Below are positions 709 to 50,967 of a stretch of 64,000 nt of DNA, in pieces. The stretch comes from Takakia lepidozioides (taxonomy: Eukaryota; Plantae; Bryophyta): contig CM060731.1 in the NCBI GenBank assembly GCA_030704615.1, forward strand, positions 48,794,001 to 48,858,000, read 5' to 3'. Made by a program: the position numbers and the translations under genes. The notes under the pieces were generated by a model that was given only the letters and a program-made list of their open reading frames with translations, ran no database searches and had not been told where the DNA came from. Each line of letters starts with the position of its first letter. Position 1 is the stretch's first letter.

Positions 709-1743
709 AAAACATCCGCTTGAATATGTGTTTCGAAGTTCTGAAGCGGCTCACGCTATGCCTGACTTCAACCACAATACCCAAGTACGCAAGTACTCAC
801 ACAGCGGCTTCGTCAGTAGACATTGCTTCAGTACTTCGCATGATTCAAGTATCGGTCCTAACACGACGCTGTTCACCCTGTACTCTCCAAACAGCCTCAG
901 CAATGATATCTTGTCCTTCCTGGTTGACGGGTTCATATAGCGCACCTCAAGCTGACTTTTTCAACACGGAGAAACGAACTCTGAGACAGGCTGCAGCTTG
1001 TACTCCAAAAGCCCATCTCCCTGTCTTGCCGCAGGAGGTGGGATTGACTTCCAGGAGGAGCAAAGAAAGAAGGAACGGGTCAAAACGTGACGCCATAGCT
1101 GCTCCATAGTCAATAGCTTCAGGGCCATAGCGGCCAAGTGGGCACTTTAAAACCTCCCCTTTTTCTTTAGTCAGTAGGTACGATTCCAGGATTGGACTGC
1201 TCATATCTCATCATCCAAAACGAGACAATTATAGGAGACTACGAGAGCACAAGCACTCATCAGTGTCTCCATCCCATCCTCGCAACGAGCACGCTCTATA
1301 AAAATCCTTGGGACTTCCCAGTGAGATCATGATATCCTCGCCGCTCTGGCACGGCACTCGAATGGCACTTGGAGCTGTTCACCAAAGCAGCGCTTCCGAG
1401 ACTTTTTGTGTATCTACTCTTAGCCGATTCCCAGGAGGGTTACCATGTATGACAATGGGATTCATTTAGTTTATGAGTGGAAAATGCACACATCCCTGTG
1501 AAGTGGACGTTCATGTGGGCCACCACAGCACTCAACCACCGTTGTTCTCAACATGATTCTCATGGTCGAAGTGCAACAATAGTCGGGTTGATTTCCTTTG
1601 TGAAGAAGGATTGTTTGCTCGTTCGAACAATCATGCAGTCTTTTGAAATTACTCATGTGGGTGAATTTCGTTTGAGATGACCATCATTCATAACCAACCT
1701 TTTGACCTTTTCATCTGTTTGCCTTTTAGTAGCAATCTGGGTG

Positions 1744-2041
1744 GGCGCACATTAGAAAAGCCCTGGGAGTTTAATGCGACCCCTTCCGTCCTGCGTGCGT
1801 GGCACCCCCCCCCCACCCCAGCCGCACCCCTTCGCCGGCTCCTGCGCGGCTCGCGGTCGCTGCGCCCCGGCGCCCTCTCGCCAGCCCACCCCTCACGCCC
1901 CCATCCCCCTGCCCCCCGCCATCCCCCTCCCCGCCCGCCCGCCCTCCCCGCCCCCCGCCCGCCGGCCGTCACCACACCACATGAACTTTGTGGCACATGA
2001 CACCTATCACCACAACCCAACATCGCGCGCAGGACACATCG
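1744..2041 (+). repeat. Left terminal inverted repeat of the MULE (C-rich)
   Basis: Inverted match to 21013-21282, from GGCGCACATTAG to ...GGACACATCG. Confidence 0.93.
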
Positions 2042-2419
2042 TGAGTCGAAAACATGGATCCATACATGGCAGATGACACATACATGATGGTCACGAAAGT
2101 AACATGATGACCATCACGAAAGTCACATTATGACCATAGGCGTGAAGCCCTCACATATGCATGCATAAACAAGGTTGTACATGTTCAAATTTCAAAATTC
2201 AAATTTGAAATTTAGTATTATTTTATGGATTGGGTCTACTTCTAGGATTTAGGATGGATGTATGTAGGTACGGATGGATGAGACCAAGAAGTATGTGTAA
2301 TGAGAGGCAACCTCCAATCGTCACCTTCCTTTCATGGTCCTCTCAAACTGTTCTGACCACGAAAGCACAACGTGCAGCCAGTACCAGCCGTGCCTCAGGT
2401 CCCTGAATTGCGCCACGAT

Positions 2420-3613
2420 ATGTCTGTTGCCGAGAATGAAGATAATATTGCAACCCATCTTGTTTTGCTGCTTCGAAACCAAGTTCAAATGCCCAATGTA
2501 GGTGCTTTTAACCAGCATGTACTGCAGTGGCGTTTCCAATGGCATGGCAAGCCTCCTGGCCAAAACTCTGTTGAAGTCGCCTACATTCCCTAGAATCGAG
2601 TTGCTGATTTCATTACAGGGGAGTCTTCCCGTTCAGATGGCCCATGCACTTTCAGCAGGCATCAGCAAAGATGCCATCCGGAGGGGTCTCTCTCAGCTCC
2701 TCGCAGCAACAGTGCCAGGACTACAACAAGGTACATTGGGCTACAGGTCATGTGTTGCAAGGGCTACTGAATGATTTCCATGAATGTCCGAGTGCCTGAA
2801 TCCCCTTGGTGTCATAGTAACGGATTGTTTTTTTGTTATTGTAGGTATCACTGCTCATATGGTCCACAGGACAGAACTAGTTCCCTCTTGGAGGTTACCC
2901 CTGCAATGGCACACAAGAAACGCCGAGTGAAGCCTGCAAAGAAGAAGGGGAGGAAGCCAAGAGCCACGGCCGCTTCCACTGAAGCAAAGCCAAAACAAAT
3001 GAGGACCACACAAACAAAATCGGGGGAAGGCATCAAGAGGGGATGCATGTGCAGGTTTGTAGTGAAGCAATGCTATGTGGACCCTGATATTGTAGAGCTG
3101 GTCTATTATGAAAAGAGACATGTGAATGGGGCTGGACAGGTCTTCCATGGACCTGCGCATCAAGTAGGTCGCGTTTCATTAGCTCCCCACCTGAGAGATG
3201 AGATGAAATCATGGGTGTTACACAACCTCCGTCTCGGACTAAGCATCAACAAGATAATGGCCAAGCACACGCAGAAGGTGAGGGAAATCATGGATGGGGG
3301 GTTCGAGGTTACTCGTGACACCTTCCTTCTTTCAAATGACATCCGAAATATTGCCAACAAGTGCGATGAAGAAACATTCAAAAAGCACTCCAATGATGCA
3401 CAAAGTGTCCGAATGTGGGTGCATGAAAACCCAGGAAGCATTTTCTACTACCAGGAAGAGTCTAATCACCCTGCTTGGACGTTGAATGACAGAAAACTCG
3501 ACCTTCCATTTGTGCTTGGCATACAAACTGATTGGCAGAGAAAACAGATGCTCAAACACGGCCATCGTCGCATAGTTGCTTGTGATGCAACCTTTGGAAC
3601 GAATGAAAAGAAG
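2420..3613 (+). pseudogene. MULE/SWIM-family transposase, N-terminal half (premature stop, truncated)
   Basis: Exon 2420-2730 has an in-frame TAG at 2591-2593, followed by a GT-AG intron at 2731-2844 and exon 2845-3613. Motifs VAYIP..VADFITGES, CSYGPQD, KRGCMCRFVVK, PFVLGIQTDWQ and ACDATFGTN (first catalytic D) match the At4g13970/At1g60560-like MULE family as I recall it. The remaining DDE and SWIM exons were not found. Confidence 0.85.
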
Positions 3614-5249
3614 GTTCGTCAGATTGTTAACCCAAATTTCTTGAAAGCATGACAAATTACGTTCTTCGTGTGAAGTACTCTGTTTTGCAACCATTTCCTT
3701 TGCATTTGAAGAAGGTCTCCTGATTCAAAATACCTACTGAACTACAGTGACCCAAACCAAAGATCCAAACTCCTAGCAAGTTGAACTACATCCCAACTCA
3801 CATGTAAGAGTTTGATGAGGCTACAAACCGAAAGAGAATGAGCCCTGTATCTGATGCTATTGTTATGATGGTCTCCAATACTAGAAAGTCGCCTCTTCAA
3901 GGCAACAATACGCAGAGCTCGGTTTAAAACCCGCTGAGGCGGTTCAGAGTGTGTCCTGAACCCTAAACCTCAATGAAAAGCAACATACCTCGTTGGCAGG
4001 CTGAAAAGATGCATTGGTCTTCCTCACCGTCTCCTGCAGATCACATGTATTAGCCACAATATTTAAGATCCAAAGAACTTCACCACCCCCTCATAGTTCA
4101 CCATCCCATTTCCATGCACACACAAATTTGAAAAGACATGTTCAGTCGGAAGGTCTGCTTCAGATTATCCCTACATAGACCAGCCTCATTTCCCATTAAC
4201 TCAGCATACACCCCATGGAAATGACAGACCTGAAGTTCAGAACCAGGAGAAAGACATGGCTACTCGGGAAATTACCCACCCGTGCCCCAAGATTCCAGGA
4301 CCAGGAAGAGGTTGTACACCGGCTGAAGGACTTCAGGTAAGCCAACATAGGGAGGTCTCATGGATCACCAACAGTGCAGCTGCAAAACAGCCTAACACCG
4401 TTGTACTCAGGTCAAAGATTCCTATGTGCTCCTAACGAAGGTTGGGGGCCACATGCTTTGGGCCTGGACCCTTCGAAGGAGAACGAGTGTTTTCATATTT
4501 TTACCTTGTTTCAATGGGTAGATGAAGGTTGGGACTGCATTAAACTGCTGGACGAACTTCCTTCCCCCATCATTCGCAAGCTTCAGAAGGGTTGCAGACC
4601 TGAAAGACCTTGGACCAGGGCTGGTGACATTTGTCTAACTATTGAGGATGGAGTGATGCATGTCATGTTTGCTTCCTTCATGCATTTGCGGAAGAACTCA
4701 TCCTCGCTGTTTTTGCGTGTCTTGCCGCATTGGGGGAGCAATCACTTCCACCACTCAGTCTTCTTCTTTCGGTGGGATATGAGAGTGTGTGTTTGGAAAG
4801 AGAGAATGATTAGGCAAGAGGTTCAGGTGCCTAATTATGAGTGGAATTTCAAAGATGTTGACTAGTTAATAGCATCTTGAACCTCTTTCACTAGCATCAC
4901 ATAGTTTGCCTCTTTTCTACGTTTGTGTGACCCTTCAGGGTGGAATTCTGGAAGCATGTGATGTTTGCTTGAACAATGTAGATGCCAAAAAACAGATTGT
5001 CACAACAATCTTTCCATGTATTCATGTCCAAAGTGTACTCCCGGCATTCATGGTTTTCATTTTGCTTTCACATGGTTTGAAGGTTCTCCCACCTTACTTG
5101 CACATGCACGGGTTCATGCACTTGCATATGTTCTAAAGTAGGTGCAGCAAGTGGAGTTGAAAGTGAATGACACATGCTGGGAGTTGTTGGAATCACTCAG
5201 TGTTGGGGTTTTGTCATCAGTGAGCAACCCTATTCAGGACCATACTCCT

Positions 5250-7109: not shown

Positions 7110-10100
7110 GGCCGATTTGATAAGAGGGAAAAACAGGGTGAAATGTGTTGAAGAAGGTGCCTTGATTAACAGTGCCTGATTTGATCAATTGTGTCGCTGC
7201 TGCTGCGGCTTCCAGTTGACCATCTACCCATGCAAGTTTCTTGTACCTATCCTTCCACAGGGAATCATAGGTAATATGGAGCTTGAAATCCGGCCCTCTT
7301 GGATGAATCTGGACCCACACATCTATCCCTGATCCTTCAGCTATCCATTCCCTTGCACAAATCATGCATACATCCTCGCCTTGCTGCTAGCAGCTGACAA
7401 TGACAACCTAGAATTGCTTGAGCAAACACCCCAACCCTACTTATCACACTAGTTCCTATGCTGACTTGCGTCTGCTTCCAACAGGCATTCACCTTTTGCC
7501 TCGATTGTTCCATCATTGACTGAGGTCGGGAACGTATTCATCCTAGAGCTTCTCCTCGAGTCTCTGTTATCTATTTTTCGATACTTTCCTGTCGACCACA
7601 TTGGCAGTAACATGTCAAAATCACTCCAAAACTATCATAGATCCACCAACGAGCTAACTTGCAGAATTCAACATTAAAATTTAGGGACGACTCTGATAGC
7701 AGGGGAAAACAAGGTGAAATATGTTGAAGAAGGTACCTTCATTAGCAGCGCCTTGTTTTATGAATTGTGCTGTTGCCGCTGTTGTTTCTAGTTGACCATC
7801 TACCCACTTATAGCCGCTGTGAGCTATTGAAGAAGGTGCCCCCTTCCCCCATCATTTGATCATATGTCTCCATACCATGTCCCTGCTCTGCATATCCTAC
7901 AAGCATCGCGTTCCATGACACCACATCTCGTTCAGCCATAGTGTTGAAAACTCCCTTCGCATCCTTAATGCACCCACATTTCGCATACATGTCCACCAGG
8001 GTAGTGTTCAGAATGACATCTGGTACAATTCCAGCTTTGATGGTGTCACCATGGACCTCTTTCCCCTTTTCCAGAGGTCCCAGGCTTGCACACGCATTGC
8101 AAACACAAACAAACGTGATGTGGTTGGGCTTCACCCCTTCGCGCAGCATTTGCTCATAGGTCTCCAAAGCATTCGTACCACACCCATGCTTGGTAAATCC
8201 TGCCAACATTATATTCCACGTTATCAAAGATCATTTAGACATTCTGTTGAAAACTTCGTGAGCATGCATGCATGATGCTCCTGCACTTAACATACATGTT
8301 TGCTTCTGCACCCACATTTTGCATAGATGTCCACCAGGGTATTGTTCAAAATGGCATTTGGTACAATTCCAGCCCTGATGATGTCGCCATGGACCTCTTT
8401 GCAAGCCCTTTTCCAGAGCGACCATGGCTGTGTTCAGAATGACATTTGGCACAATTCCAGCTTTGATGATGTCACCATTCACCTCTTTGCCCTTTTCCAG
8501 GGCTGCCAAGCTTGCACAAGCATTGCGAGTGCACACAAACGTGATGTGGTCGGCCTTCACCCCTTCGCACATCATTTGCTCATACGTCTCCAAAGCCTCC
8601 ATCTCGCGCCCCTGTTGTGCATTCACTGCGAGCATCGCACTCCACGACACCACATTTCATTCAGCCATATTGTTGATCACTCCCTTTGCATCCTTGATGC
8701 TCCCACATTTGGCATATAAGTCCACCAGGGCAGTGTTCAGGATCACATTTGGTATGATTCCAGCTCTGACGATGTCGCCATGCACCTCTTTGCCCTTTTC
8801 CAGGGCTACTAGGCTTGCACACGCACTGCAAACGCACACAAACGTGATGTGGTCGAGCTTCATCCCTTCACACATCATTTGCTCATACGTCTCCAAAGCC
8901 TCCATCCCGCGCCCCTGCTGTATATACCCTGCGAGCATCGCACTCCACGACACCACATTTCGTTCAGCCATATTGTTGAACACTCCCTTTGCATCCTCGA
9001 TGCTCCCACATTTGGCATACATGTCCACCAGGGCAGTGTTCAGGATCACATCTGGTACGATTCCAGCTCTGACAATGTCACCATGCACCTCTTTGCCCTT
9101 TTCCAGAGTTGCCAGGCTTGCACACGCACTGCAAACGCACACAAACGTGATGTGGTCGGGCTTCATCCCTTCACACATCATTTGCTCATACGTCTCCAAA
9201 GCCTCCATCCCGCGCCCCTGCTGTATACCCTGCGAGCATCACATTCCACGACACCACATTTTGTTCAGCCATATTGTTGAACACTCCCTTTGCATCCTCG
9301 ATGCTCCCACATTTGGCATACATGTCCACCAGGGCAGTGTTCAGGATCACATTTGGTACGATTCCAACACTGACGATGTCACCATGCACCTCTTTGCCCT
9401 TTTCCAGGGCTGCCAGGCTTGCACACGCACTGCAAACGCACACAAACGTGATGTGGTCGGGCTTCATCCCTTCCCCCATCATTTGCTCATAGGTCTCCAA
9501 AGCATTCCTACCACACCCATGCTTGGTAAATCCTCCCAACATTATATTCCACGTGTTCAAAGATCATTGAGGCATTTTGTTGAATACTTGGTGAGCATCC
9601 ATGATGCTCCCGCACTTAACATACATGTTGACAAGGGTGTTGAGGAGAAAAACATTTGGCGTGAATCCACTTTGGATAATGTGAGTTTGCACCTATTTTT
9701 CAGCTTCCAGGCCTTTCACCTTGATGCACTTATGCAAGAGACAGACATACGTTTCTGAATCTACTGAAATGCCTCCTTGGTTTAAAGTCTGTAGAGCCTC
9801 TGTCAGTCTGCCTGCCTCACAAAGCATCTTCACATGCCCATAAGTGCCAGAAGAGACATTGTGGACTCCCTCTCTTGATCCGCTTCCAGAAGCTGTGGTC
9901 ACGGTTGAGGTGCCTGGTTTTATCAACTGTGCCGCTGCAGCTGCTGCCTTCAGTTGACCATCTACCCATGCAGGTTTCTTGTGGCTATTGATCCACAGGG
10001 AATCATAGGTAATTTTGTGCTTGAAATCTGCCCCTCTTGGAAGAATCTGTACCCACTCTCTATCCCTGCTTCTTCAGCTATCCATGCGTCTGCACAAATC

Positions 10101-18330: not shown

Positions 18331-20428
18331 TTAAGAACCACCAGGAACTGAAATGTAGTAGCACGAACCGTGGTAAGGGCAATACACACCTGGTGGACAA
18401 GGAAGCCAGCCCATGTTGACATCCTCCCGATGCTTCAAAATTTTGTTCAAGTCCTTCAAGACTTTTTTCTTGCCCCCTGCACCATCAGTTGGTATACTCC
18501 CACACCATAATATTTTGAAGGCAATAGGATTCAGAACGGCGAGGTCACGCACAGCCCTGCATCGGACCTCGCGCATGAAACAATGCAGATCTTCAAAAAG
18601 GTGTTCGCAGTCCTCTTTCCGCACTCCCCAAAGGGCTGCAAGCCCTTCACGCACCTGGGTTCGGGCTTCCTCGTATGAGGGCATGCCTTCGTACATGAAG
18701 TATCCAATCTGCAGGAAAGTCTCACCCGCATTTGTAATGGCACACTGGCCATCTTCTGTGTCGAGAAGATGATTTCGGAGAGTTAACAAGATGGAGTTTC
18801 GGGGAATTGACATAGGTTTCATGTTGTGAACGTGAGACATCCAAACCAGACGGAACACCCTGCTGAAAAGCGGAATGTTTGGAGGTGGAGCGTGGTGGCG
18901 AGCAGCCTCAAGAATGACCATCAACCTATCAGATTCATCCTCAGAATGTGTGAACATATCGGGGGGCAACTCAGGGATCTCACCTACTGCAACAATTTGG
19001 TACAGAGGGGACCAACCCCAGATTCCCTCCTGTTTCTCATCATATTGTTCTCTATCCCATTTTGCCATGTTGTCGTCAACAAACTGCCTTCTACGAGCCT
19101 CCAACTCAGACTGGGCTGCAATTCCTTTCATTTCGAAATCCAGCAATGCCATGGCATACTTGTGATGTGCCATCACCAGTTGGCATTCCGCCAACTGAGC
19201 GGGATGGTCACGAGTTACTCCAGGACGTATGGCAAATAGCTCCACCACATTTTCCACAGCTGCCTTCTCCTCTAGAGGTGCATCAAACTGCTCCCCCGCC
19301 ATTGCAGAGTCATGGAGCTGGTCAGTAATAGAGGAAGAGTAACCAAAAACCCTAAACTTGAAAGGCAACTTCAAACAAAATGCAAAGACACGCATCATCA
19401 AAGAAGGAGTTGTGACCATGAAGGTGCAGGCCAAGAAGAAGGTGTGTTACCCGTCGTTTAAGCCACCATTGACCGAAAGCGTTGCCCATCATTTGGTCCC
19501 CGAACTCAAATTTCCCAATAAGAGCCATAAGACGATTGAGAAAAGAAGGCTCGTCCAGAGATGGAAATCCGTCGGGCAACAAGTCGAACTTCATCAAATA
19601 GGTCAGTCCTGGGCATGAAACAGGTGCGGGTATGGGAGGCACAACAATATCTGAGGTCAGTAGCAACGACGCCTTGACAAAGCCTTCCCTTGCCTCTTCT
19701 CTACTTAGCGGTGCAAGGGTTGTGGACTTAAGAATGCGCACTGGAGGTCTGCCATCTTGTCTACATGAAGATGCAACTCCAACGTGCACTTTGGGTCGAA
19801 GACTTTGCTGCGGCACGGCAGGAGGTCGTACAAACGTAGAGTTTACAATGCGCTCAGATGGAAGACTTTCCTGTGATGGCAGAGGTGCGTCCAATGAGTC
19901 CTTTTGAATGCGCTGAGGTCTGACAGTCTGCTGTGGCAGCGCAGGTGGTGCGTCCAACAACTGGAAATTGTCATCGTCATCATCATCGTCAAGGTCCATT
20001 CCCGGCTCCTTCCGAAGAGTCATGTGCTTCCTGCGCTTAGGTTCTCGTGTAGTCTCTTCTGTCGTCGTCTCCTCGCGTTCTACCCTCGTCTTCATCAACT
20101 TGCAGGAAGGAGGCTTCATCCCATGCTTACTAAGAACAGCCTCCATGATGTGCCTCTGCCCCTTTTCAAAAACAGGGTACATTTTCAATTTAGGCCCACC
20201 CTTTCCCACAACAGCATCACAGCCATTTATCCTGTGAATGTTAAGTTTCTTCTTATCTTTATATTGCTTAAGACAATGGATACACTTGAACGGCTTCCTA
20301 TTATCATCACCGGGCTGCTCAACCCTTGCCTCTGAGTGAGCCTCGCATATGAGATTTTCCCACTCATCAGAGTCGTACGTTTCATTGTATGTCCGACGCG
20401 CTTCGCGCATGGAGGATTGTTTCATCAT
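18331..20428 (-). CDS. Two-exon ~650-aa unknown protein with N-terminal C2HC/C2H2-like zinc finger (MULE accessory gene candidate)
   Basis: Long ORFs 19352-20485 and 18331-19434 are joined in frame by a phase-0 GT..AG intron at 19450-19318 (CGG|GTAACAC ... TACTGACCAG|CTC). Features are FKCIHCLKQYKDKKKLNIHRINGC, a basic NLS-like PKRRKH, a poly-D tract, a Pro-rich linker and a helical C-terminal domain. Confidence 0.7.
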
Positions 20429-21012
20429 ATCGGCGCCCACTCCAAATCCACTACCCTCCTCCTGAAGAATCCTCCAGCCGAGCAAAGGTTGCTGGAATGT
20501 GAAAGCAAGAACTCAAACTAAAACATAAAGCATGCAAATGGACTGCAACAGACAGAAATGGCAAGCAAGAGGAAGAAAATAGCTGCAAATCACACGAATG
20601 ACTTCCAAATTCTCCAAAAAGAAACCCTATACTCAAGTCGAATGAGTAATCACTTTACCGCCACAACTAGTCAACAGTTTATAACAGCCGCGATGCATAC
20701 TCCTCAAGGAAGTGCTTGTAACACCGCTTCCGCCGGGATCATACATTTCGGGCCATGCAAACGCCAGGTAGCTTGGAAAACCTGTCCTGTGGCTGCCATG
20801 AATTAAATCAATCAAGCATCTACGTAGCTGAAGGGCCGCATTCGAATCGACAGGTCCACCTTCGAATCGACAGGTCCACCATGTTCGTGCGAACTGGACG
20901 CGAAAAGCACGAAAGGATGAGTATGTGTCACATCATGTCATGTCAAGCCGTCCATCATCATGGGTGATTGCAGCACATGGATCATGTTGCATCTCATCCA
21001 TCTTTCGTCATG

Positions 21013-21282
21013 CGATGTGTCCCGCACGTGATGTTGGGTTGTGGTGACAGGTGTCATGTGCCACAAAGTTCATGTGGTGTGGTGACGGACGGCGGGCGGG
21101 GAGGGCGGGCGGGCAGGGGGATGGGGGGGGGGTGAGGGGTGGGCTGGCGTGGGGGTGAGGGGGCGCCGGGCCGCAGCGACCGCGAGCCGCACAGGAGCCG
21201 GCGAAGGGGGTGCGGCTGGGGTGCCACGCACGCAGTACCGAAGGGGTCGCATTAAACTCCCAGGCCTTTTCTAATGTGCGCC
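21013..21282 (-). repeat. Right terminal inverted repeat of the MULE (G-rich on + strand)
   Basis: Reverse complement of 1744-2041, with indels in the homopolymeric G/C tracts. Confidence 0.93.
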
Positions 21283-22825
21283 ATCTGGGTGTGTAGATGC
21301 TCCAAGCCACGAGGAAAGTAGAATCTGTGTTTTATTTCCTGTGGGATGTGCCAGCCAGGTTGTTTGGATTTTGATTGAAATGGGTAATGGCAGGAAAGCA
21401 AGCCAACACTGTGTTTCACAAGAAGTTTGAAATAGATGGTGGAAAGATTCGGTGATGGGCAGTCCAGGGAGGAACAAAAAATGATAGCAGACATCAGTTG
21501 CACTGATCAGAAACTCAGAAGGCCTTGTTGCATCTATTTCAGCTGCAGTTGAGGTCGTGTCCCTCTCTTCAAACTGGGCTGCATCTATGGCCACAACGCT
21601 CTATTCTCTACGTCCATTATGGTGGTTCGACAACCTGAAGATCCATTTGTTTCGTGGGCACTCACTCAACTCTAGTGACAAAAGGAGAGAATCAAATAGC
21701 AAACAATTGTCAGTAACAGTATAAAGAGAGATGCTATGTTTGCTATGGTGTACCTGCACGGGCACTATTCCCAGGGCAATTCCCTAGTCTGCATTGGCAA
21801 GTTCTCACCCACAAGGGTGATTGGCTATAAAATCAGCCCAAACCTGTCCTCCTGCTCAGTCACAGCCAGCAAGATTATGATTCAAGGGCTCAAAATGAGA
21901 ATTTTTTGAAAAGCATTATGTTAAATGCAGCTAATGCAGCCCTACGATGAAAACAAGCGAGAATACAAGAGAAAAAATTATCGTCAATGTAGCTAGGGTT
22001 AGCTTGTCTCTGTAAGACTGTACCGCTGGCAAAATGTGGCTCTCTCTTCATCTTTCACTCCCTTAAAAGCATGCATTGACAGTTGAAGAAAAGTTAAAAC
22101 AAGTCAAGAGGACCATCTAAGGAATGAGATCCGTAATCAATTAAAAAATGTGTGTCTCGACCAAAAGCTGAAAATTTAAGTGCTGTGATTTGGGACACCT
22201 TCACAAGCAGGGTTGATTAAAAACGGAGCAATCTCGATACAGTAACCTAAGTCAGTCTACCAAAGCACTTGCCTTCATGGCGTGCTGAAAGGATAATGGG
22301 CAGACAACAGTGACAGAGACACACCACAGCACGGACGAGCATGGACTTACTATGAGACCTATAACCTTAAATTGAGCTCTCAATCGCCTATGAATTGTAA
22401 TTCAGCATGTGACACACAGTTTCGAGAAGAAACCCAACTCACACCCGACCGAACACAGCCTGCGTCACTTGGGGAGGGCGAGGCCACAACTTTTGCAATC
22501 CTCCAGAAAAACGTTAGCCCAAGTTCCAGATTCCATCTCCATCACCAAATTATGTCATGAGCAACACAATTTTGAAGACACTCTTCACTCCAGAGTTCGA
22601 TTTAGTAACCAAGTTGGCAGATTACCTTGTCCATCTTCTTCCTCCCTTTGCGAAAGAATGAATTCATTGGGAAACTTGCCCATTGCCCAGAGCCTGATCT
22701 CCAGAACAGGGATCAACCCTCATTCACTGGGGTCTTCCATAGATGAAACACTATATGGATAAATGTATACAACACTCACCGTAAGATTAAAATACGTAGG
22801 AATCTTCAACCGTTGGATCTATATT

Positions 22826-22878
22826 AACCCTAACCGGGGCTCCAACCCCAGATCCTCCTGGAGGTTAGGTTAGGGTTT
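22826..22878. promoter_or_regulatory. Telo-box elements in the RPL7a promoter
   Basis: AACCCTAA at 22826-22833 and TTAGGGTTT at 22870-22878, the latter also at 37110-37118 in copy 2. Telo-boxes are typical of plant ribosomal protein promoters. Confidence 0.65.
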
Positions 22879-22971
22879 GAGAGGCAGCTTGAGGCGAGGG
22901 GAGGACAAAGTAAGTCTCTTTGCGAAGCTTCGTCTTCCGTCCTCTCGCCGCCATCGCCAGACGTTGCTGCA

Positions 22972-25729
<2,758 letters not shown>

Positions 25730-26313
25730 GAGACTTGTCCCAGTAGTCTTGTTGTGCCAGACGTCTTCATGGAAGCAAATTGTTTTTAGGTATGATGAAG
25801 AGTATGCGGTCATACCAGATACGCCTACTTCCAAACAAAGATCGATGAAGAGTTCTATTTTGAGAGTCTTGCCTGTCAAAGCTATGATTCATTAGTGCGG
25901 CTTTTTATGTATAAATTTTCACATGCCTGACAAGATAGGAAGCTGATGCTGATTAAGAGTGTTACCACGAGTTATACCAGATAATCATGCAACCTATCTA
26001 CCAACCGTGGATGGTATGAGTGTCGAAGGACCAAAAACGAGTTGCCTGTGGGAAGTTCTATCAACCCTGATGACTTTTTCATCAACTTGGGAAGGGTGAA
26101 CAGAAGCTTGAGTGAATATAACAGCTTGGATTAATGAGTTTTATGTGCTCCATTGGGGTGTCTGGGAAGGATCAATGTACTGAAATTCCCTTATCGTTAC
26201 CTTCTCAGAGGGGATGTTTTCATCCTGACTAGAGGAGGAACCATAACTCGTAAGACACCTAGGGCCTTACAAAATTCGGAGTATGATGATTTGGGGGTGA
26301 TGGAGGGGACATG

Positions 26314-29056
26314 TTTTATTTTTTATTTATTTTGGTCAACAGGGAACTGAGGCCCTGAGAACTTTATTGAATGGCAAAAGAAAACAGAACAAAAGAGGAG
26401 GAAAAAATAACCTCCTAGAGGACTGTAAAGGTGTATTGCATGGGGAACTCCAATCACTAAGAGGGAAGAGCCCGAAAAGCGGGAGTTATCTAAGTATCAG
26501 TCTAGAGGGGTGGTAGGAGAGAGAGCTCCATAAGGCCAAAGTTAGCCTAAGGGCACCAGCAATATTGGCAGCCTGATGAAATCGCCACATAGCTGGTAGA
26601 CTGGCGCAAATGCTGCAAAACTGATGAAGTGGCACTAATTGGCAAAGTGCCCAAACCCAGGGACATAGATTAGAGACCGAAGTTCAGCTGGGTTTTTGAT
26701 TTCGCAGCGCGGAGACGTCGAGTCCCTCTGACTCAGCAAGAGACTTGCCAGATGGCATCATGCCAAGTGATTCGCAAGTCTCAGACCCTGGTGCAGAGGA
26801 GGCCATCTTTTGCCCAGGTGAGGTCGAAGTTCGCGAATAGTTGACGACGCTGCATTTGGCTGACGCTGCTTGCAAAGACACCCAAGCCTTTCGCCCCTCA
26901 GTCATCAGATCAGTAAATAACTTATAAAGAACTAATCTGATACTGGGGCGCTTCCCTTCAAAAACCAGACAACACCTAGCCTTCCAAATGGACCAGAGGG
27001 TGCGTGTTCGGAGGCATGCCCAAATTGGACAATTACTCCAGATGGATCTATTGTGCATGTTTAGCAGTAGCAGGGGCGCAGCTGTTCGTGGCACAGATTT
27101 CCAGCGCGCATAGAAGGCTGTGACAAGCTGCCAGATCCTACCTGATAGGTAATACTCGGTGAATGTATGCTCAATTGTCTCGTTCAGGTGGCAGTTGCAA
27201 ACAAAGCACGATGGATCACGATCAAGGAACGAAACGTTCATGGGCAAAATCCTGTTTGCCAGCTTCCACAAGAAGGCACTGGTTTTAGCCAAGCGTCGCT
27301 TGGCCCATATGTCCTTCCACATCGAGTTCTAGGCAGGAAGCTGCAGGATAAAATTCCATTTTCGATTCCACTTCTCTGTAAAGTTCACCTCACCGAGAAG
27401 CAGCCTATAGCCAGTTTTCACTATATAGCCTAGAAGGGGTGTTTTTTTGTCATCTTTCCATGACCATTCTCCTGGGTCGAATTGCAATCTACTGAGCGGG
27501 AAATTCAAGAACCATGCGAAGGGGATTTCTGAGCCCAGCAATATTCTCCTCCATGTGGCGGCCTTGGTTCTGTCAAGCCTGTTAGAGTATCAAAGACTCT
27601 AGTGATTCTATAGGCCAAGTCATGAAGCAGTTCCCCATTGCCCATGAAGGATAGACTCCCGTTAGAGGCAGGCCTGAAAAGAAGACCTCCCTAGTGCGTC
27701 TGTGAGGAGGAGATTGCCAGAAGAGCCACGAGCCTATCGCCCTCTGAGCCTCCGAACCAGACAGGCAAGTCATTGACAGTGGACCTCCCAGAAGCAAGGG
27801 TTGTACAAGTGAGACCGCTTCTTTTATCTGATCCCATCCGCTCCTAATAGAGCTTGCAGCAAGCAAAGAGGACAAAAGGGAAGGGTCTAGCAGCTGACCG
27901 TTTTCCCAGACATTGGCAATGTGCGAAAAGCCTTTTGCCTCCCAGGTGGCCCGCTTCTAGTTGAGAGTAGCCAAATGATCAGCATTCAGGTTGTGGTTGC
28001 CAAATAAGGGTTGTCGAATGGCCTCTTCAAAGCAGGCAGCTCCACTTTGAGTCAAGTGGGGACAAATGGACTTCCATGCCTCCCAAATAGAGTTCCAGGC
28101 AGCAGATCCTGCTATTCTCGATTTTCCAGTACCGTGAACCAGCCATTTAAGGGTGCCTGGGAGTTGGTCGGGAAGGAGTGCACCATGTGTGCTCTTACCA
28201 GAGTACACCAGGGACTAAGCCCATTACATATCGACCTTGGTATCCACTTAGAGAGCAATGCAGATATCTGCAAAGCCGGGTCAATAAGTCCCAGACCTCC
28301 TTCCTTATGGGGTCTACAGAGCTGGGTCCAAGATACCAACGCCCTTTTGTTTGGATTCTGGGGGAGGCGCCCCATAAGAAATCCCTCATAAGCGCTTTAA
28401 TCTTATTCATGAGCTTGGAGCCAGGTGACCAGACCGAAGCTGGATCTCAAATAGAGGCGAGCAAAACCTGGTTAAGGACTAGCACTCTCCCTGCAATGGA
28501 GAGCATTGTCGAACTCCAGAAGGCCAACTTGACAAAACCTCTGTAAAATGGGCTCAAATCTTTGTTCATCCGAAAGCCCGATTCTTATCTGAAAGCCAAG
28601 GAGAGTGTGCGCCGAACCTGGCAGCAACCATCTGAGGCCCAAATCTTGCCCCCAAGGTGGAGCGTGGCTTTTTAGAGAGGAGTCGGGCAGCTTCGTAAGA
28701 AGCCCCACAGATTTATTCCAATTGATTTTGAGCCCTAATGCCAAGCAGAAGAACTGCAAGGCTTGTCTGGCTCTATCGATATTGGATGCATCCTCATTGT
28801 TTAGAAACAACATGGTGTCATCCGCCTACATAGAGAGCTTAATATCAGGCCCTTGCATCAGATTTAACCCCACTATGTCCTGTCTGGAAGCAAAATAGTG
28901 GCCCAATGCATCAGCAGCCATGATGAATAGGTAAGGGGAGAGGGGACAACCTTGTCTCACCGATATGTGGAGGGCAAAGGATTTAGAAATAGGGAGATTG
29001 CTATTTCCTGAGCAGAACCCGTGAGGAGAAAATATTGTGAGCAAAATTTTGCTCAT
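26314..29056 (-). mobile_element. 5'-truncated degenerate L1-clade LINE (RT C-terminus + zf-RVT)
   Basis: SVRQGCPLSPYLF, YADD mutated to *ADD, GLKINWNKS, HKEGGLGL, CFVCNC..ETIEH and WSIWKAR. An A-rich tail appears as a T-tract at 26314-26333 on +. Confidence 0.92.
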
Positions 29057-30292: not shown

Positions 30293-30394
30293 CATGGATG
30301 CTCCCACTGTACCAGCTGAGGAGCGCGAGCCATCATGTCGATGTTCCTCGCATGTAGGGGTTTGAAGTACTCAAAAAGGTACTCCCTTAGCAAC

Positions 30395-30860
30395 ATTAAG
30401 CTTGGATTACAACAACCTATTTTTCCCTGGAGATTCATCTTCTAATCTAATAGTACACAGTTCTTCATTGTATTGACCACTCAACAATGGAATGTAAGGT
30501 AAATCCGTTTTCTTTTTGTTAGATGTACTTGCTATTTCTTCAAATGAATCCAAAGTGTTCACGTCTTTTAATTAGTTTTAGATTTGACTCCTATCTATTA
30601 TTATATGCAACTAAACATTGATTTGTTGTTCTATGGAAGTTTAGATTTGGAAGAGCGCTATAGTATTGCCGCTCTCTCTCGTGTCTCATGTCTTTGAGTG
30701 TCTTATGTCACTCACTTGAGGCAACAACCATAACAGCTTGCTTGCCTTCAAGAATGTGAGAATTACATAGTTGTTCTCTGACAAAGACATGATTATTGAG
30801 AAAAATCGTAAGCATTTTACGTTTGAGAATGTAACATTGCATATTAAATGTTATCCCTTG
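30395..30860. repeat. Dispersed repeat, inverted homolog of ~52240-52610
   Basis: AAGCTTGGATTACAACAACCTA..GTTCTTCATTGTATTGACCACTC matches the reverse complement at 52480-52580. AACATTGCATATTAAATGTTATCCCTT is shared in direct orientation. Confidence 0.7.
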
Positions 30861-35947: not shown

Positions 35948-38900
35948 GACATTTTCATCTGTTTGCCTTTAGTACCAATCTGGGTGCGTAGGTGCTCAAA
36001 GTAATGGCAGGAAAGCAAGCAAACACTGTGTTTCAGGAGAAGTTGAAATAGATGGAGGAAAGATTCGGTCAGGGGCAGTCCAGGGAGGAACAAAGAGTGA
36101 TAGCAAACATCAGTTGCACTGATCAGAAATTCGGAAGGCCTTCTTGCATCTCTTTCAACTGCATTTGAGGTGTGTCCCTCTCTTCAAACTGGGCTGCATC
36201 TATCGCCACAATGCTCTATTCTCTCTGTCCATTATGGTGGTTGGACAACCTGAAGATCCATTTGTTTCGTGTGCACTGAACTCTAGTGACAAAAGGAGAG
36301 ACTCACATAGCAAACAATTGTCAATAACTGTACAAAGACAGATGCTATGTTTGCTATGGTGTACCTTCACAGGCACTATTCCCGTGGCAATTCCCTAACC
36401 TGTATTGGCAAGTTCTCACCCACAAGAGTGATTCGCTATAAAACCAGCCAAAACTGTCCTGCTGCTCAGTCACAGCCAGCAGGATTATGATTCAAGGGCT
36501 CAAAATGAGAAATTTGTGAAAAGCATTATGCTCGATACAGTAACCTAAGTCAGTCTACAAAAGCACTCGCCGTCACGGCGTGCTGAAAGGATAATGGGCA
36601 GACAACAGTGACAGAGACACACCACAGCACGGACGAGCATGGACTTAAGAGACCCATAAATTGAGATGTGAAATACAGTTCCAAGAAGACACCCAACTCA
36701 CAAGTGACCGAACACAGCCTGCGTCACTTGGGGAGGGCGAGGCCACAACTTTTGCAATCCTCCAGAAAAGCGTTAGCTTCAAGTTCCGAATTCCATCTCC
36801 ATCGCCAAATTAGGTCATGAGCAACACAATTTTGAAGACGGTCTTCACTCCAGAGCTCGATTTAGTAACCAAGTTGGCAGAGTACCTTGTCCATCTTCTT
36901 CCTCAATGGCAAACTACCAGAGCCTGATCTCGAGACCAACCCTAACACTGGGGTCTTTCGTGGATGAAACATTATATGGATGAATGATTGTATTTTCGGT
37001 ATAAGGTACACAACACTCACCGTAGGATTAAATACGTCGGAATAATCAACCGTTGGATCTACAATAGCCCTAACCGGGATTCGAACCCCAGATCCTACTC
37101 GTGGTTAGGTTAGGGTTTGAGAGGGGAAGCTTGAGGCGAGGGGAGGAGAAATTGAGTCTCTTTGCGAAGCTTTGTCTTCCGTCCTCTCGCCGCCATCGCC
37201 AGACGTTGCTGCAATGGTACGTGCTCGTAGCTATTCCCCTTCGAACCTCTCCTTCATGCAAGTTTTTCTGCTGTAATGTTATTGCAGAAATTTCTGCCAT
37301 GGTGTGTACTGTCTTTTCTCCGAAGCTGGAAGATGAAACTGAAGACGATTCGTAATAAGCTTGATTAGAGGGGCAGCCTTGTGGAAAAATTTGTTCAGCA
37401 TCTTAAATTTGGATATGTTTGTATGTTCCCGTGGTGCTGCTTCAGACAGAACCCTGGACTAACTTGCATGAATGTTGTCGAAAGCTAGCCTTACTCTTCC
37501 TGCGCCGTATCACGTAACGTCACCCCTGTCCTAGCAATATTCTACACTGCCTCTTGTCTTTCGTGAATTTGAAATCCTGCCCCCAAGTCGTGGGTGTGTA
37601 GCAACTTAACACCATTTCTATGGACATCCGTTTTAAGAATGTCAGGCGCTACCTTCCCTCGCCATTGTCTCTCATTCTACATTGTGACGAGACATCGCCA
37701 TATCTTGGTTGCTTTGGCAGGCTCCCAAGAAGGGGACATTGAAGACTCCGACCCCGGCACCTGTGGAGAAGAAAAAGGTGCGCATCCATGCACTCCTTGC
37801 TATGTTTGAACTGGGGGCACATGCAATTGTCGTATGATCTGCCGTGGAAAGGCTTTCAACGCGTATTCTCTTTCTGCACAACCTCTGATGTGCTATGAAT
37901 GCGTGCAGACCCCTGAGAAGGTGGTGAACCCGTTGTTTGAGAAGCGGCCAAAGCAATTTGGGATTGGTGGAGCCCTTCCTCCTAAGAGGGATCTCCACAG
38001 ATTCGTGAAATGGCCTAAATATGTGCGCATCCAAAGGCAACGCCGTGTGCTCAATCAGCGGCTGAAGGTCCCCCCTGCCCTCAACCAGTTCACCAAGACA
38101 CTCGACAAGAATCTTGGTCAGTGGGTTATTGCCTTGGTACAGTGTGCGTCTGCGATTTCGTCTAGAGGTGTAGAATTCAGACATGATGAAGGCAATAGTT
38201 CAGATATGGTGGACATCCTGAATTTGGGACTCTCAACAACAAGCTTACATGTCCAATGCTTATGAAGTTAATGCATAAATCAACTACATAGGAGATGAGG
38301 GGTTGGAAATGTCCCACAGATTGTGAATACATCATTTATTCCCTAGTACATCTACCAATCCAGCCACAGTCACTTGTAAATCTAGTATGTAATCTTGTCA
38401 AATGATATTACTAACCCAGCCCATTGAGTATCCTACCCACAGCAATCATTGGACGAGGATAGCATCCTCTCTGTCCTCATTTCATCACTGTCGCAGTTCA
38501 AATTGGTTGTTTGTCAGGATATGTAGTCAGGCAGATTGTTTGCATGTATTGATTAAATATGTTACTGATGGGTACAGCAACAAGCTTGTTCAAGATGTTG
38601 CTAAAGTACCGGCCAGAGGACAAGGCAGCCAAGAAGGAAAGGCTTCTGAAGAAGGCCCAGGCAGAGGCTGAGGGGAAAACCCTAGAGACCAAGAAGCCTA
38701 TTGTGGTTAAGTATGGCATTAACCACGTAACCTACTTGATCGAGCAGGTATGGCATCTTAGTCACATTCTTAGCAAATAATATTGTTCATCTGATTTCTT
38801 GTAGTTGAAGCGAGAAAACTACTAATTTCTTCTCCTCCGAAGAAGGATGAGCAGGCTGAGAAGGAAGACATTCTCTAAATGTGCTGGCTGATTTATGAAT

Positions 38901-40403
38901 TGGTTGGTAAGGGATGAGAGGTTATATAAGATGTCATAGGTTGGTTAGAGATTAAGGAGTGGAATGTAGAACCAAGCTTGGAGATGTTGACCCCTCGTGA
39001 TGGGAAGGTTCAGGGTGGCTGACATACACTGGTGGATGTGAGCAGGGGAAGGCACAGCTAGTGGTGATTGCCCACGATGTGGACCCTATTGAGCTTGTGG
39101 TGTGGTTGCCAGCCCTGTGCCGCAAGATGGGAGTACCTTATGCTATTGTTAAGGGCAAGTCGCGTCTGGGCGCGGTAAGAGGTCATCCTCAGTACTGCTA
39201 CTTTCTTCATCTAGGCACTGTTAGGCTGCCACCAGGCAATGATGTTCTCTCGGCTGAAATGTAGATGAGTAGAATAAAGTAATGCAGTCTGCATAGCTGT
39301 GTTGAGGTAACTCCCTTCAGTATCTTGCCTGGTATGTCAGATTGTACACAGCAGGACAGCTACAGCACTGTGCTTGACTTCAGTGAAGAATGAGGACAAG
39401 CATGACTTCTCCAAAGTTGTCGAGGCTGTAAAGGTAAACTCTTCACAGTATATCCATTGGCCGGGGCTATTTTCTTGGTTTGTGAACATACCATGGATAA
39501 GCACACTTTTGTATGGCTTGGGTATGCTTCTTAGTGTAGGTGCAGGATTATCGCTGTTCATCTCTTCTGGTGTTCGAAGTATGTGGAGGTTCTGTAAACA
39601 CAAGGGGGTGTTGTCATTTGATGGGTTTATCAATTTCTTCTTGGAGTGACATTCTTCGGTCACCTACAGTCTCTCTCTCCTTCTGCTCTTTCCCTCTTGT
39701 TGTGGGTGTGTAGTCTGTGCTAGACTTCCATGAGTACACATCAATGTAATTTATGATGCCCACCCGCTTCCGTGCAGGCAAATTTCAATGATCGCTTTGA
39801 TGAGTTCCGGAGGCAATGGGGTGGAGGCATCATGGGTGTCAAGTCGCAAGCTAAGACAAAGGCTAGGGAGCGTCTCTTAGCTAAGGAAGCTGCCCAACGC
39901 ATGTCCTGAGAGACTTGTCCCAGTAGTCTTATTGTGCCAGACGTCTTCATGGAAGCAAATTGTTTTTAGGTATGATGAAGAGTATGCCGTCATACCAGAG
40001 ACGCTTACTTCCAAACAAAGATCGATGAAGAGTTTTGTTTTGAGAGTCTTGCCTGTCAAAGCTATGATTCATTAGTGCGGAGTTTATGTATAGATTCTCA
40101 AATGTCTGACAAGATAAGAAGCTGATGCTGATTAAGAGTGTTACCGCGAGCTACACCGGATAACCATGCAACCTATCCACTAACCATGGATGATATTACT
40201 GAGTGTGGAAGGACCAGAAACTAGTTGCCTGTGGGCAGTTCTAGATGAGATAAGAAGCTGATGCTGATTAAGAGTGTTACCGTGAGCTACACGAGATAAC
40301 CTTGCAACCTATCCACTAACCACGGATGATATTACTGAGTGTGGAAGGACCAGAAACTAGTTGCCTGTGGGGAGTTCTATCAACCCTGATGACTCTTTCA
40401 TCA
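35948..40403 (+). repeat. Segmental duplication, copy 2 (lacks the MULE)
   Basis: TTTTCATCTGTTTGCCTTTAGTACCA-ATCTGGGTG-CGTAGGTGCTC joins the two MULE flanks. An internal ~135-bp tandem duplication lies at ~40112-40380. Confidence 0.95.
37214..39909 (+). CDS. RPL7a: 60S ribosomal protein L7a (eL8), copy 2
   Basis: Exons: 37214-37216 (alternative ATG 37299-37301), 37721-37777, 37909-38116, 38578-38747, 39046-39174, 39341-39433, 39778-39909. Exon lengths equal copy 1 and the ORF is intact. Confidence 0.96.
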
Positions 40404-50250: not shown

Positions 50251-50967
50251 TGTCGCGGCCTTTTGCCTTGAGGGCAGGGGGTCGGGACGCAGAGGGGCTG
50301 CCCCTGTGGTGGGGGCGGTGGCAGCAATAGGTAGGGGGGGGGCTGAAGCACCCGTGAGTTCCCAAGGCACTCAAGGAGGCGGAGGCATTCACTAGGTGGA
50401 GCCCTACACACCGGGTTGCGATGGGGGTGGCTCCACAAGGGGTGGTGGTAGCTTAGTGGGACTTAGTGGGGGTGGTTTAGGACTCACCATGGGGCGGAGA
50501 CCTTTGTGGTGGGAGTCGTGGGGAGTCTTGGGACTCACCACAGTCCAATGGGGCCGTGGTGGGTGGGCCAAGACTCATCACCGGGAATCGAGGGTCTTCG
50601 TGGTGGTTCGCCATAAAATGGCATGGTTGTTTGTGAAACCCCCGCGGACACTCACAGAAATATATATAGGGAGTAGTAACCCCGAGAACGGTGCAAACCC
50701 GTTGGTGCCAAAAAACTAGTGAGTAAACGAACGAGCCGGAAAGCGACCAAGAAGTGGGGAGCTATTCCGGACTGGCATCTACCAAAGGGAATTTCCACTA
50801 GGCCCAAATTGGTGGAGGGTCTGTTGGAAGAGTAAGGGGGACCGTTATTTCTCGGTGAGCAGCCGAAACTCCGAGTTGGCCCGACGGCCAGGTTGGGAGT
50901 TAGGCGCGCGCATCAAAGTGAGTAACTATGACTTAAATGGGAGCTTACCGAAGTGAAGTGCGCGACA
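50251..50967 (+). mobile_element. Solo Gypsy LTR (same family as 60778-61480, opposite orientation)
   Basis: TGTCGCG...CGCGACA termini and colinear similarity to the reverse complement of 60778-61480. No matching TSD (GTACC vs ATTCA). Confidence 0.9.

What the first reader, a model, noticed from the sequence alone, without database searches (positions are those of the whole stretch)
18331..20485. Intact convergent zinc-finger gene inside an otherwise decayed MULE: candidate mudrB/VANC-like accessory factor
Seen: ~2 kb of open frame, rejoined by one clean 133-bp phase-0 intron, while neighbouring genes carry stops. It has a CxxC-x12-H-x4-C finger, an NLS-like basic patch, an acidic tract, a Pro-rich linker and an unrecognised ~330-aa helical domain with a Cys/His-rich tail (CPPGVYCPYHGSC). 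It reads inward from the right TIR, as mudrB does. Inference: a transposon-encoded DNA-binding regulator, anti-silencing factor or integration helper of a new family.
Basis: partly seen in the sequence, partly recalled or inferred. Interest (0 to 1): 0.8.

Follow-up and report, generated by a model that had tools for sequence, protein, structure and literature searches.

The report
Second gene of moss Mutator transposons
This intact two-exon gene is the second, non-transposase gene of a lineage of moss Mutator "jumping genes", from a protein family with no described function. It matters because relatives of the same gene sit in ordinary, conserved chromosome positions in model mosses, where its function could be tested.

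Summary
A minus-strand gene (ATG 20428, stop 18331) has two long open exons joined by a GT..AG intron. It lies inside a 19.5-kb Mutator-like element that has 9-bp target-site duplications, ~300-bp inverted ends and an empty paralogous site in the same window.

The protein matches no Pfam family and no known fold. It does have moss relatives that share both halves:
- an N-terminal domain with an invariant C2HC (C2H2-type) finger;
- a ~300-residue all-helical C-terminal domain.

In four further loci, one of them in Ceratodon purpureus, a homolog lies next to a homolog of the same transposase in the same convergent layout. TIRs and 9-bp duplications were verified only for the two Ceratodon copies. 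Those copies give dN/dS 0.17-0.38. This points to an ancestral accessory gene of this element lineage, not recent cargo.

A slowly evolving clade of the family sits at a syntenic, transposon-free host locus in Ceratodon, another moss and Physcomitrium (dN/dS ~0.1). This is probably domestication.

The acceptor is more likely 19288 than 19318. The Cys/His tail is not conserved. The protein is not a member of the VANC family, and function is untested.

The scan has an untested note (s1-476679) of a C2HC accessory gene in other MULEs of this genome.

The parts
1735..1743 (.). Left copy of the 9-bp target-site duplication, ATCTGGGTG
   Evidence: Read directly. The same 9-mer follows the right TIR and occurs only once at the empty paralogous site.
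1744..2059 (+). Left terminal inverted repeat, starting GGCGCACATTAGAAAAG
   Evidence: 82% identical over 319 nt to the reverse complement of 20996-21282.
2471..3649 (+). Truncated MULE transposase: an exon-like piece at 2471-2734 and an open 293-codon ORF at 2771-3649. The 3' SWIM-bearing exon is absent, so the element is non-autonomous.
   Evidence: 39% identity over 210 aa (E 4e-46) to exon 2 of the Ceratodon element's transposase, and 28% over 88 aa to exon 1. No match to exon 3 anywhere in the element. Pfam itself is blank.
18331..19287 (-). Accessory gene exon 2 (318 codons plus stop at 18331-18333). The helical C-terminal domain is about 19287-18388. The non-conserved Cys/His tail is 18387-18334.
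   Evidence: HMMER search gave 23 relatives. Alignment A2 keeps all 7 invariant residues. AF2 pLDDT is 84, with the tail below 50.
19288..19450 (-). Intron, GT..AG, 163 nt, with an alternative in-frame acceptor giving 19318-19450 (133 nt)
   Evidence: Sequence. A contig of run X1 joins 19451 to 19287 once two CpG transitions are allowed. The host genes of Ceratodon and Physcomitrium have an intron at the same position. The Ceratodon MULE-borne model's intron lies about 10 residues away.
19451..20428 (-). Accessory gene exon 1 (326 codons from ATG 20428). It holds the N-terminal domain (about 20428-20102) with the C2HC finger (20284-20219), the basic patch, the Asp run, the Pro/Gln linker, and the conserved PCPGL..GxW segment (about 19657-19451).
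   Evidence: Alignment A3 shows C, C, H, C invariant in 20 sequences. The profile hits classical C2H2 fingers in the PDB. AF2 pLDDT is 80.5.
20996..21282 (-). Right terminal inverted repeat. The accessory gene starts about 570 bp inside it.
21283..21291 (.). Right copy of the 9-bp target-site duplication, ATCTGGGTG
35948..36001 (+). Empty paralogous target site. Both flanks are contiguous, with a single ATCTGGGTG at 35978-35986.
   Evidence: Left flank 1704-1743 matches 35948-35986, and the right flank from 21384 matches from 36001.

Best explanation
This is the accessory (second, non-transposase) gene of a lineage of moss Mutator-like elements. It belongs to a protein family that I found described nowhere.

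The element has ~300-bp TIRs and makes 9-bp target-site duplications. Its transposase reads inward from one end and this gene reads inward from the other, as mudrA and mudrB do in maize MuDR.

The protein is about 644 aa and has these parts:
- a ~110-aa N-terminal domain built round one invariant C2H2-type finger whose last ligand is Cys (C2HC);
- a basic, NLS-like patch;
- a fast-evolving low-complexity linker;
- a conserved PCPGL..GxW segment;
- a ~300-aa all-helical domain containing a ~60-residue helix.

Shown: the gene family travels with this transposase lineage and is under purifying selection in recently active Ceratodon copies. The window copy is intact and keeps every invariant residue, but it sits in a non-autonomous element whose transposase has lost its 3' part.

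Inferred: the protein is nuclear. It uses the finger domain to contact nucleic acid, most plausibly the element's own DNA. It uses the helical domain for oligomerisation or for contacts with the transposase or with chromatin proteins. In this way it would help transposition or expression of the element.

My rough odds for the function:
- helper of the transposition reaction or of targeting, MURB-like: about 0.35;
- regulator or anti-silencing factor, VANC-like in action: about 0.25;
- something else: about 0.4.

A host-resident branch of the family in Bryopsida is most simply read as a domesticated copy.
For: 1. The element is a real MULE insertion. It has a 9-bp TSD, 82%-identical ~300-bp TIRs and an empty paralogous site.
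2. Its transposase remnant is 39% identical (E 4e-46) to the transposase of a Ceratodon element. Exon 3 of that transposase sits nearest to MULE (PF10551) and SWIM clusters (score 0.95) and has a weak SWIM match in Pfam.
3. Ceratodon carries at least 4 dispersed copies of a homolog of this gene, on chromosomes 2 and 11 in one isolate and on 3 and V in the other. Two were read. Each lies in a ~15-kb element with ~300-bp TIRs and its own 9-bp TSD (GTTCATTTG, GTAGACAAG), convergent with the transposase.
4. The same pairing and orientation occurs in three further loci: L009/L010, L011 and L012.
5. Between the two Ceratodon copies, dN/dS is 0.17 for the C-terminal domain (18 synonymous versus 11 non-synonymous codon differences) and 0.38 for the N-terminal part.
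6. Both halves are homologous across the family. All invariant residues are kept in the window copy.
7. The intron lies at the same position in the Ceratodon and Physcomitrium host genes. A spliced junction using the same donor appears in a contig of a diverged copy from the same species.
8. The finger region matches classical C2H2 fingers (E down to 3e-8).
Against: No function was measured.
- No run listed holds this copy's RNA. The only junction evidence comes from a ~94%-identical copy that carries an in-frame stop, in a run whose RNA nature is a guess.
- This element is non-autonomous and its TIRs are only 82% alike, so this copy may be an unbroken relic.
- A single C2H2-type finger rarely gives sequence-specific DNA binding on its own.
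- No dense motif array was found in the element's non-coding DNA.
- The predicted complex with the transposase N-terminus gave no verdict.
- The family tree is unrooted and poorly resolved at depth. The window sequence is on a long branch. An old capture of a host gene by the ancestor of this MULE lineage cannot be excluded.
- For three of the co-occurrence loci the organism is unknown, and TIRs were not examined or lie off the contig.
Confidence: 0.78

Rival explanations
1. Captured host gene. A Pack-MULE-like element picked up a complete moss host gene (the Cullin-linked C2HC gene family), and the copy has no role in the life of the element.
For: A clade of the family sits at a conserved, transposon-free host locus (Cullin - gene - PEPcase) in Ceratodon, a second moss and Physcomitrium. 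That clade evolves under strong constraint, with dN/dS 0.10-0.14. MULEs are known to capture host genes (established knowledge). This element also carries other foreign DNA, a nested PPR-bearing insertion. The shared intron shows transfer at the DNA level, which fits capture as well as domestication.
Against: The gene accompanies homologs of the same transposase, in the same orientation, in five loci that are 19-27% identical to one another in this protein. Independent captures of the same gene into the same position are very unlikely. A single capture would have to be as old as the element lineage, which makes the gene an element gene in practice. Copies in Ceratodon show purifying selection. 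The window protein is only 31% identical to any host-type protein.
Confidence: 0.08
2. Relic copy. The family is a genuine MULE accessory gene, but this particular copy in a non-autonomous, ageing element is no longer expressed or selected, and has simply not yet been hit by a stop.
For: The transposase of the element is truncated. The TIRs are only 82% identical. No listed run holds this stretch. A related copy in the same species already carries CpG-to-TpG changes that create a stop. The transposase remnant ORF (293 codons) is also still open, so openness alone is weak evidence of selection.
Against: 644 codons are open across two exons with intact splice signals. Every family-invariant residue is retained in both domains. 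Both open runs exceed all 100 shuffles. A trans-acting accessory protein could be selected even in a non-autonomous element.
Confidence: 0.3
3. Ordinary host gene that merely lies between two unrelated inverted repeats.
For: Relatives are annotated as plain 'uncharacterized protein' host genes in Physcomitrium and Ceratodon.
Against: A perfect 9-bp duplication flanks the repeats. A paralogous site in the window lacks the whole 19.5 kb and has the 9-mer once. A transposase remnant lies at the other end.
Confidence: 0.02

Closest known systems
mudrB / MURB of maize MuDR
   Same: It is the second gene of a Mutator element. It lies at the end opposite the transposase, is transcribed inward and convergently, and is lineage-restricted with no recognisable domain. 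[quoted passage not shown]
   Different: MURB is a small protein known only from Zea (own knowledge). The protein here is about 644 aa, with a C2HC finger domain and a 300-aa helical domain. It is spread across deeply diverged mosses. The predicted contact with the transposase gave no verdict.
VANC (and VANB) of Arabidopsis VANDAL elements
   Same: It is a MULE-encoded non-transposase protein with conserved domains separated by a highly variable region that contains tandem peptide repeats. Examples are the PPA(L/V)PQQ..RP repeat here and a 36-aa repeat in the Ceratodon copy. It evolves faster than the transposase: 19-27% versus 39-49% identity.
   Different: VANC proteins carry DUF1985 and DUF287 and bind short motifs arrayed densely in the element's non-coding DNA (PMC5735166). 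Neither domain is found here, and no such motif array exists in this element. The fold has no match.
Ulp1-like (Peptidase_C48) accessory genes of KI-MULEs
   Same: These are also recurrent extra genes of MULEs. One relative of this element (L012) carries a weak Ulp1-like ORF as well as this gene.
   Different: There is no sequence or fold relation. This protein is not a peptidase by any test made here.
Domesticated MULE genes (FHY3/FAR1, MUSTANG)
   Same: A host-resident, syntenic, strongly constrained branch of a transposon gene family exists, with three loci in Physcomitrium.
   Different: The known cases derive from the transposase. Here the host-resident branch corresponds to the accessory gene. 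The direction of transfer (domestication or ancient capture) is not settled.

Membership tests
Mutator-like element (MULE), for the element that carries the gene | Target-site duplication of 9-11 bp | tested here: met
   ATCTGGGTG on both sides and once at the empty site. The Ceratodon relatives also have 9-bp TSDs.
Mutator-like element (MULE), for the element that carries the gene | Long terminal inverted repeats | tested here: met
   ~300-bp arms, 82% identical. In Ceratodon the ~300-bp arms are 90-98% identical.
Mutator-like element (MULE), for the element that carries the gene | MULE-type DDE transposase, often with a SWIM finger | tested here: inconclusive
   The window holds only an N-terminal remnant with no Pfam hit. 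That remnant is 39% identical to a Ceratodon transposase. Exon 3 of the Ceratodon transposase is nearest to MULE PF10551 and SWIM clusters (0.95) and has a sub-threshold SWIM hit.
VANC anti-silencing proteins | DUF1985 and DUF287 domains (PMC5735166) | tested here: not met
   Pfam scans of both exons at E up to 1 list neither domain. Homologs are also blank for both.
VANC anti-silencing proteins | Cognate short motif arrayed at high density in the element's non-coding DNA | tested here: not met
   The most frequent 8-mer occurs 8 times in 9.6 kb, and there are no arrays. The Ceratodon relative has a 43-bp palindromic array, but its reader is unknown.
VANC anti-silencing proteins | Induces loss of DNA methylation at its own element | not testable with these tools
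   Needs expression followed by bisulfite or long-read methylation assays.
mudrB / MURB | Sequence homology to MURB | not tested
None of the 23 HMMER hits is a Zea protein by name.
mudrB / MURB | Second ORF at the end opposite the transposase, convergent with it | tested here: met
   Window: transposase on + from the left end, this gene on - from the right end. The layout is the same in L007/L008, L009, L011 and L012.
mudrB / MURB | Binds the transposase N-terminal region (PMC12973397) | tested here: inconclusive
   The predicted complex of Ceratodon transposase exon 1 with the accessory C-terminal domain gave no verdict.
Classical C2H2 zinc finger | C-x2-4-C-x12-H-x3-5-H beta-beta-alpha unit | tested here: inconclusive
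   The spacing C-x2-C-x12-H-x4-C is invariant in 20 sequences, with Cys in place of the last His. The profile hits C2H2 fingers in the PDB at E 3e-8 to 1e-3. Pfam zf-C2H2_4 scores only 14 bits against a cut-off of 27.

The most novel reading that the evidence does not exclude
Moss MULEs evolved their own trans-acting accessory factor, unrelated in sequence to VANC and not shown to be related to MURB. It would read the element's DNA through the C2HC domain and protect or activate the element. One copy was then domesticated in the ancestor of Bryopsida, and it now serves as a conserved nuclear regulator (three loci in Physcomitrium patens). This would be a co-opted MULE accessory gene rather than a co-opted transposase; all the domesticated MULE genes I know of derive from the transposase.
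Probability: 0.2. Interest if true: 0.85.

Novelty: new variant of a known kind. Interest (0 to 1): 0.68.

Why it matters
Accessory genes decide whether Mutator elements insert, stay expressed or escape silencing. Only a few are understood (MURB, VANC), and each is confined to a narrow lineage.

This is a large, two-domain accessory protein conserved with its transposase across deeply diverged mosses. It has a strongly constrained host-resident branch in Physcomitrium patens and Ceratodon purpureus, where gene targeting is routine.

Two questions become directly testable:
- what a MULE accessory protein does outside flowering plants;
- whether accessory genes, and not only transposases, are recruited by hosts.

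The result also gives annotators a marker for this element lineage, which Pfam does not recognise.

Tried and rejected
- **Word-indexed protein searches.** Searches with each exon found nothing. The full HMMER search was needed.
- **Pfam.** On both exons it gave only sub-threshold zf-C2H2_4 and DUF2518. DUF4187 and DUF2989 on homologs are sub-threshold.
- **ESM Atlas.** No usable hit by features for exon 2. By structure, TM was at most 0.28.
- **Foldseek and VIA-align on the C-terminal domain.** Only the long helix matched coiled coils, at Z up to 6.6. 'No known fold' is therefore provisional for that part.
- **N-terminal domain.** Best Z was 3.0 and best Foldseek E was 0.5.
- **Profile A2 against the PDB.** Positions 12-86 hit the MIT domain of VPS4B at E 5e-4, 22 bits. 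I rejected this as probably compositional, because the model shows one long helix there, not a three-helix bundle.
- **Predicted complex.** Ceratodon transposase exon 1 with the accessory C-terminal domain gave no verdict. It is evidence neither for nor against binding.
- **RNA evidence.** No listed run holds the stretch. Only three short contigs of run X1 lie on it, all from diverged copies.
- **Weak tblastn hits.** Exon 2 hits at 23700-23780 and 37873-37953 (E 0.09-0.5) were taken as chance.
- **Flanks of host-type loci.** TIRs were sought around the Ceratodon host gene (L001), the Sphagnum gene (L002) and L004, and none were found. Transposase homologs were sought in all host-type loci within ±10 kb, and none were found.
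- **Rooting the family tree.** This was not possible, because there is no outgroup.
- **Joined protein.** The spliced protein was never built, searched or folded.
Full report
**The observation**

Two long open frames lie on the minus strand. They are 20485-19352 (377 codons) and 19434-18331 (367 codons), and they sit in different frames. A GT at 19450 and an AG at 19319-19318 bound a 133-nt intron.

The stop-free runs of 386 and 371 codons are each longer than the longest run in any of 100 shuffles of the window (mean 172, maximum 300). The translation contains the C-x2-C-x12-H-x4-C finger, a basic patch, an Asp run, a Pro/Gln-rich linker and the C-terminal CPPGVYCPYHGSC.

**The element**

Inverted repeats of about 300 bp lie at 1744-2059 and 20996-21282. 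They are 82% identical. Both are flanked by the 9-mer ATCTGGGTG.

A paralogous stretch of the window has the two flanks joined, with that 9-mer once, at 35978-35986. The 19.5 kb is therefore a genuine insertion with a 9-bp target-site duplication, the Mutator signature.

At the left end, on the plus strand, there is an exon-like piece (2471-2734) and an open 293-codon ORF (2771-3649). Pfam does not recognise either. They are nevertheless 28% and 39% identical (E 4e-46) to the first two exons of a transposase found in Ceratodon purpureus. Exon 3 of that transposase is absent from the window element, so the element is non-autonomous.

**What the gene encodes**

Pfam, the word-indexed protein search on each exon and the ESM Atlas all gave nothing. 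The exhaustive HMMER search with exon 2 found 23 proteins at E up to 0.001.

The full-length hits share both halves with the window gene. These are Ceratodon KAG0615240, three Physcomitrium loci and a Sphagnum cluster. All are annotated only as hypothetical or uncharacterised.

Homologs align from their first residue to the ATG at 20428, which I take as the start.

In the N-terminal domain, eleven positions are invariant in 20 sequences, including the four zinc ligands. A profile of the domain hits classical C2H2 fingers in the PDB at E 3e-8 to 1e-3. It is therefore a single C2H2-type finger with Cys as the last ligand, embedded in a larger conserved domain. The AlphaFold2 model (pLDDT 80.5) has no structural match, with best Z 3.0.

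In the C-terminal domain, seven positions are invariant in 29 sequences, and the window protein keeps all of them. The model (pLDDT 84, pTM 0.71) is all-helical, with one helix of about 60 residues. Only that helix finds matches, and they are generic coiled coils. The Cys/His-rich tail is not conserved and is modelled as disordered.

**The intron**

The host genes of Ceratodon and Physcomitrium have an intron at the same place, directly after the GxW(Y/W).. motif. One homolog model reads through an intron at that position. The annotated intron of the Ceratodon MULE-borne copy lies about 10 residues away, so its position agrees only roughly.

No listed run holds this stretch. One 129-nt contig of run X1, from the same species label, lies on both exons. 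Whether X1 is RNA is only a guess.

The tool aligned that contig as a 168-nt skip with five unmatched letters. Read against the sequence, those letters are the last bases of exon 1 with two G-to-A changes on the plus strand at CpG sites. The contig then joins 19451 directly to 19287.

The 19288 acceptor gives a gap-free alignment with the Ceratodon protein (RR|FDAPLEEKAAVENVVELF against RE|TDADEEEQRAVKLTMSRF). By sequence, the 19318 acceptor has the better pyrimidine tract. Both may be used.

The contig is only about 94% identical to the window, and its two changes turn CGA CGG into TGA TGG. It therefore comes from another, degenerate copy. This shows that the family is multi-copy in this species. 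It does not show that this copy is expressed.

**Transposon gene or cargo**

This was the key question, and related loci answered it.

*One clade is a host gene.* The Ceratodon protein closest to the window protein lies between Cullin and PEP carboxylase genes. It has no inverted repeats and no transposase nearby. The same neighbours flank its orthologs in a second moss and, for Cullin, in Physcomitrium. dN/dS is 0.10-0.14.

*A second, divergent Ceratodon homolog is transposon-borne.* It is annotated at four non-syntenic places in two isolates: chromosomes 2 and 11 in one, and 3 and V in the other. I read two of these copies.
- Each lies in a ~15-kb element with ~300-bp TIRs and its own 9-bp duplication (GTTCATTTG, GTAGACAAG).
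- The accessory gene is on one strand, including an upstream ORF with the same C2HC domain.
- A three-exon transposase is on the other strand.
- That transposase is nearest to MULE and SWIM clusters.

*Three further loci show the same pairing.* L009/L010, L011 and L012 come from public assemblies of unknown organisms. Each shows the same gene facing a homolog of the same transposase. TIRs and target-site duplications were not examined there.

*Summary of the evidence.* Five loci share the pair and its orientation, although they are only 19-27% identical to one another in this protein and 39-49% identical in the transposase. The two Ceratodon copies differ mainly at synonymous sites: dN/dS is 0.17 in the C-terminal domain (18 synonymous versus 11 non-synonymous codon differences) and 0.38 in the N-terminal part. 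The gene is therefore a long-standing, selected component of this MULE lineage.

**Direction of transfer**

In the unrooted tree, the Bryopsida host clade is tight and short-branched. The MULE-linked sequences (window, P0009, P0012, P0014, P0020) lie on long branches on both sides of the midpoint.

This is most simply read as domestication of an element gene in the ancestor of Bryopsida. An ancient single capture cannot be excluded without a root. The Sphagnum gene is intronless and has no transposase within 10 kb. Its status is open.

**Mechanism**

*Shown:* the position of the gene, its conservation, the evidence for selection and the domain anatomy.

*Inferred:* the protein is nuclear (basic patch), contacts nucleic acid through the finger domain, and makes protein contacts through the helical domain.

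- It is not a VANC relative. VANC is defined by DUF1985 and DUF287 (PMC5735166), and both are absent here.
- This element has no dense motif array.
- Like VANC, the protein has a variable, repeat-bearing region between conserved domains.
- Its layout mirrors mudrB. [quoted passage not shown] My one predicted-complex test, on the Ceratodon pair, gave no verdict.

I put a MURB-like helper role slightly ahead of a regulator or anti-silencing role. Both are untested.

**State of this copy**

This copy is intact and keeps all invariant residues. However, it sits in a truncated element with diverged TIRs, and nothing shows that it is transcribed. I give about 0.3 to the reading that it is an unbroken relic.

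**Limits**

- The joined (spliced) protein was not built, searched or folded. Exons were handled separately by reference.
- Only this window of the genome could be read, so copy number and TIR linkage in this genome remain untested.
- An earlier first-stage note (s1-476679) reports a C2HC accessory gene in two other MULEs of the same genome. It may be the same family, but I could not check it.
- Literature searches found no description of this gene family.

Noticed in passing
window 21384-26064 and 36001-40379: A segmental duplication of about 4.7 kb, 80-97% identical, with about 14.2 kb spacing. One copy received the MULE and the other preserves the empty site, so the insertion is younger than the duplication.
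   Followed up: partly
window 53441-54016 (-): 25% identity over 209 aa (E 6e-8) to a third, unannotated 526-aa ORF of the Ceratodon MULE (L007 13190-14770, minus strand). It lies outside the element studied, near other inverted-repeat pairs (50251-50970 / 60775-61480 and 30394-30773 / 52214-52582). It may belong to another MULE of the same lineage.
   Followed up: no
L007 15007-15449: An array of about 10 copies of a 43-bp unit made of palindromic CCCCAACT...AGTTGGGG halves, in the non-coding middle of the Ceratodon MULE. It recalls the palindrome arrays that other first-stage notes describe in MULEs of the window's genome. What binds it is unknown.
   Followed up: no
L012 4142-4954 (+): An ORF with a borderline Ulp1 / Peptidase_C48 match (E 4e-4, 20.6 bits against a cut-off of 20.7), lying between the accessory gene and the transposase of a related element. 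This MULE lineage can therefore carry two or three extra genes.
   Followed up: no
window 7808-9560 (-) and 8424-9758 (+): Tandem 303-bp repeats encoding PPR-like motifs on the minus strand, with a 444-codon open frame on the opposite strand that is probably an artefact of the repeat. This is the nested insertion inside the MULE that another first-stage note mentions.
   Followed up: no
L007 vs L008: The two Ceratodon elements are mosaic. Transposase ORFs are about 99% identical, the accessory gene 96-97%, and the 4 kb next to the left TIR only 85%. This suggests recombination between element subfamilies.
   Followed up: no
window 58639-59286 (-) and 26684-27322 (-): A reverse-transcriptase ORF (RVT_1, E 1e-34) and a zf-RVT ORF. 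These are retroelement remains elsewhere in the window.
   Followed up: no
L002 10001-12328: The Sphagnum member of the family is intronless (775 codons in 2328 bp), unlike the Bryopsida host genes and the MULE-borne copies. The cluster has 48 near-identical members from many assemblies.
   Followed up: no
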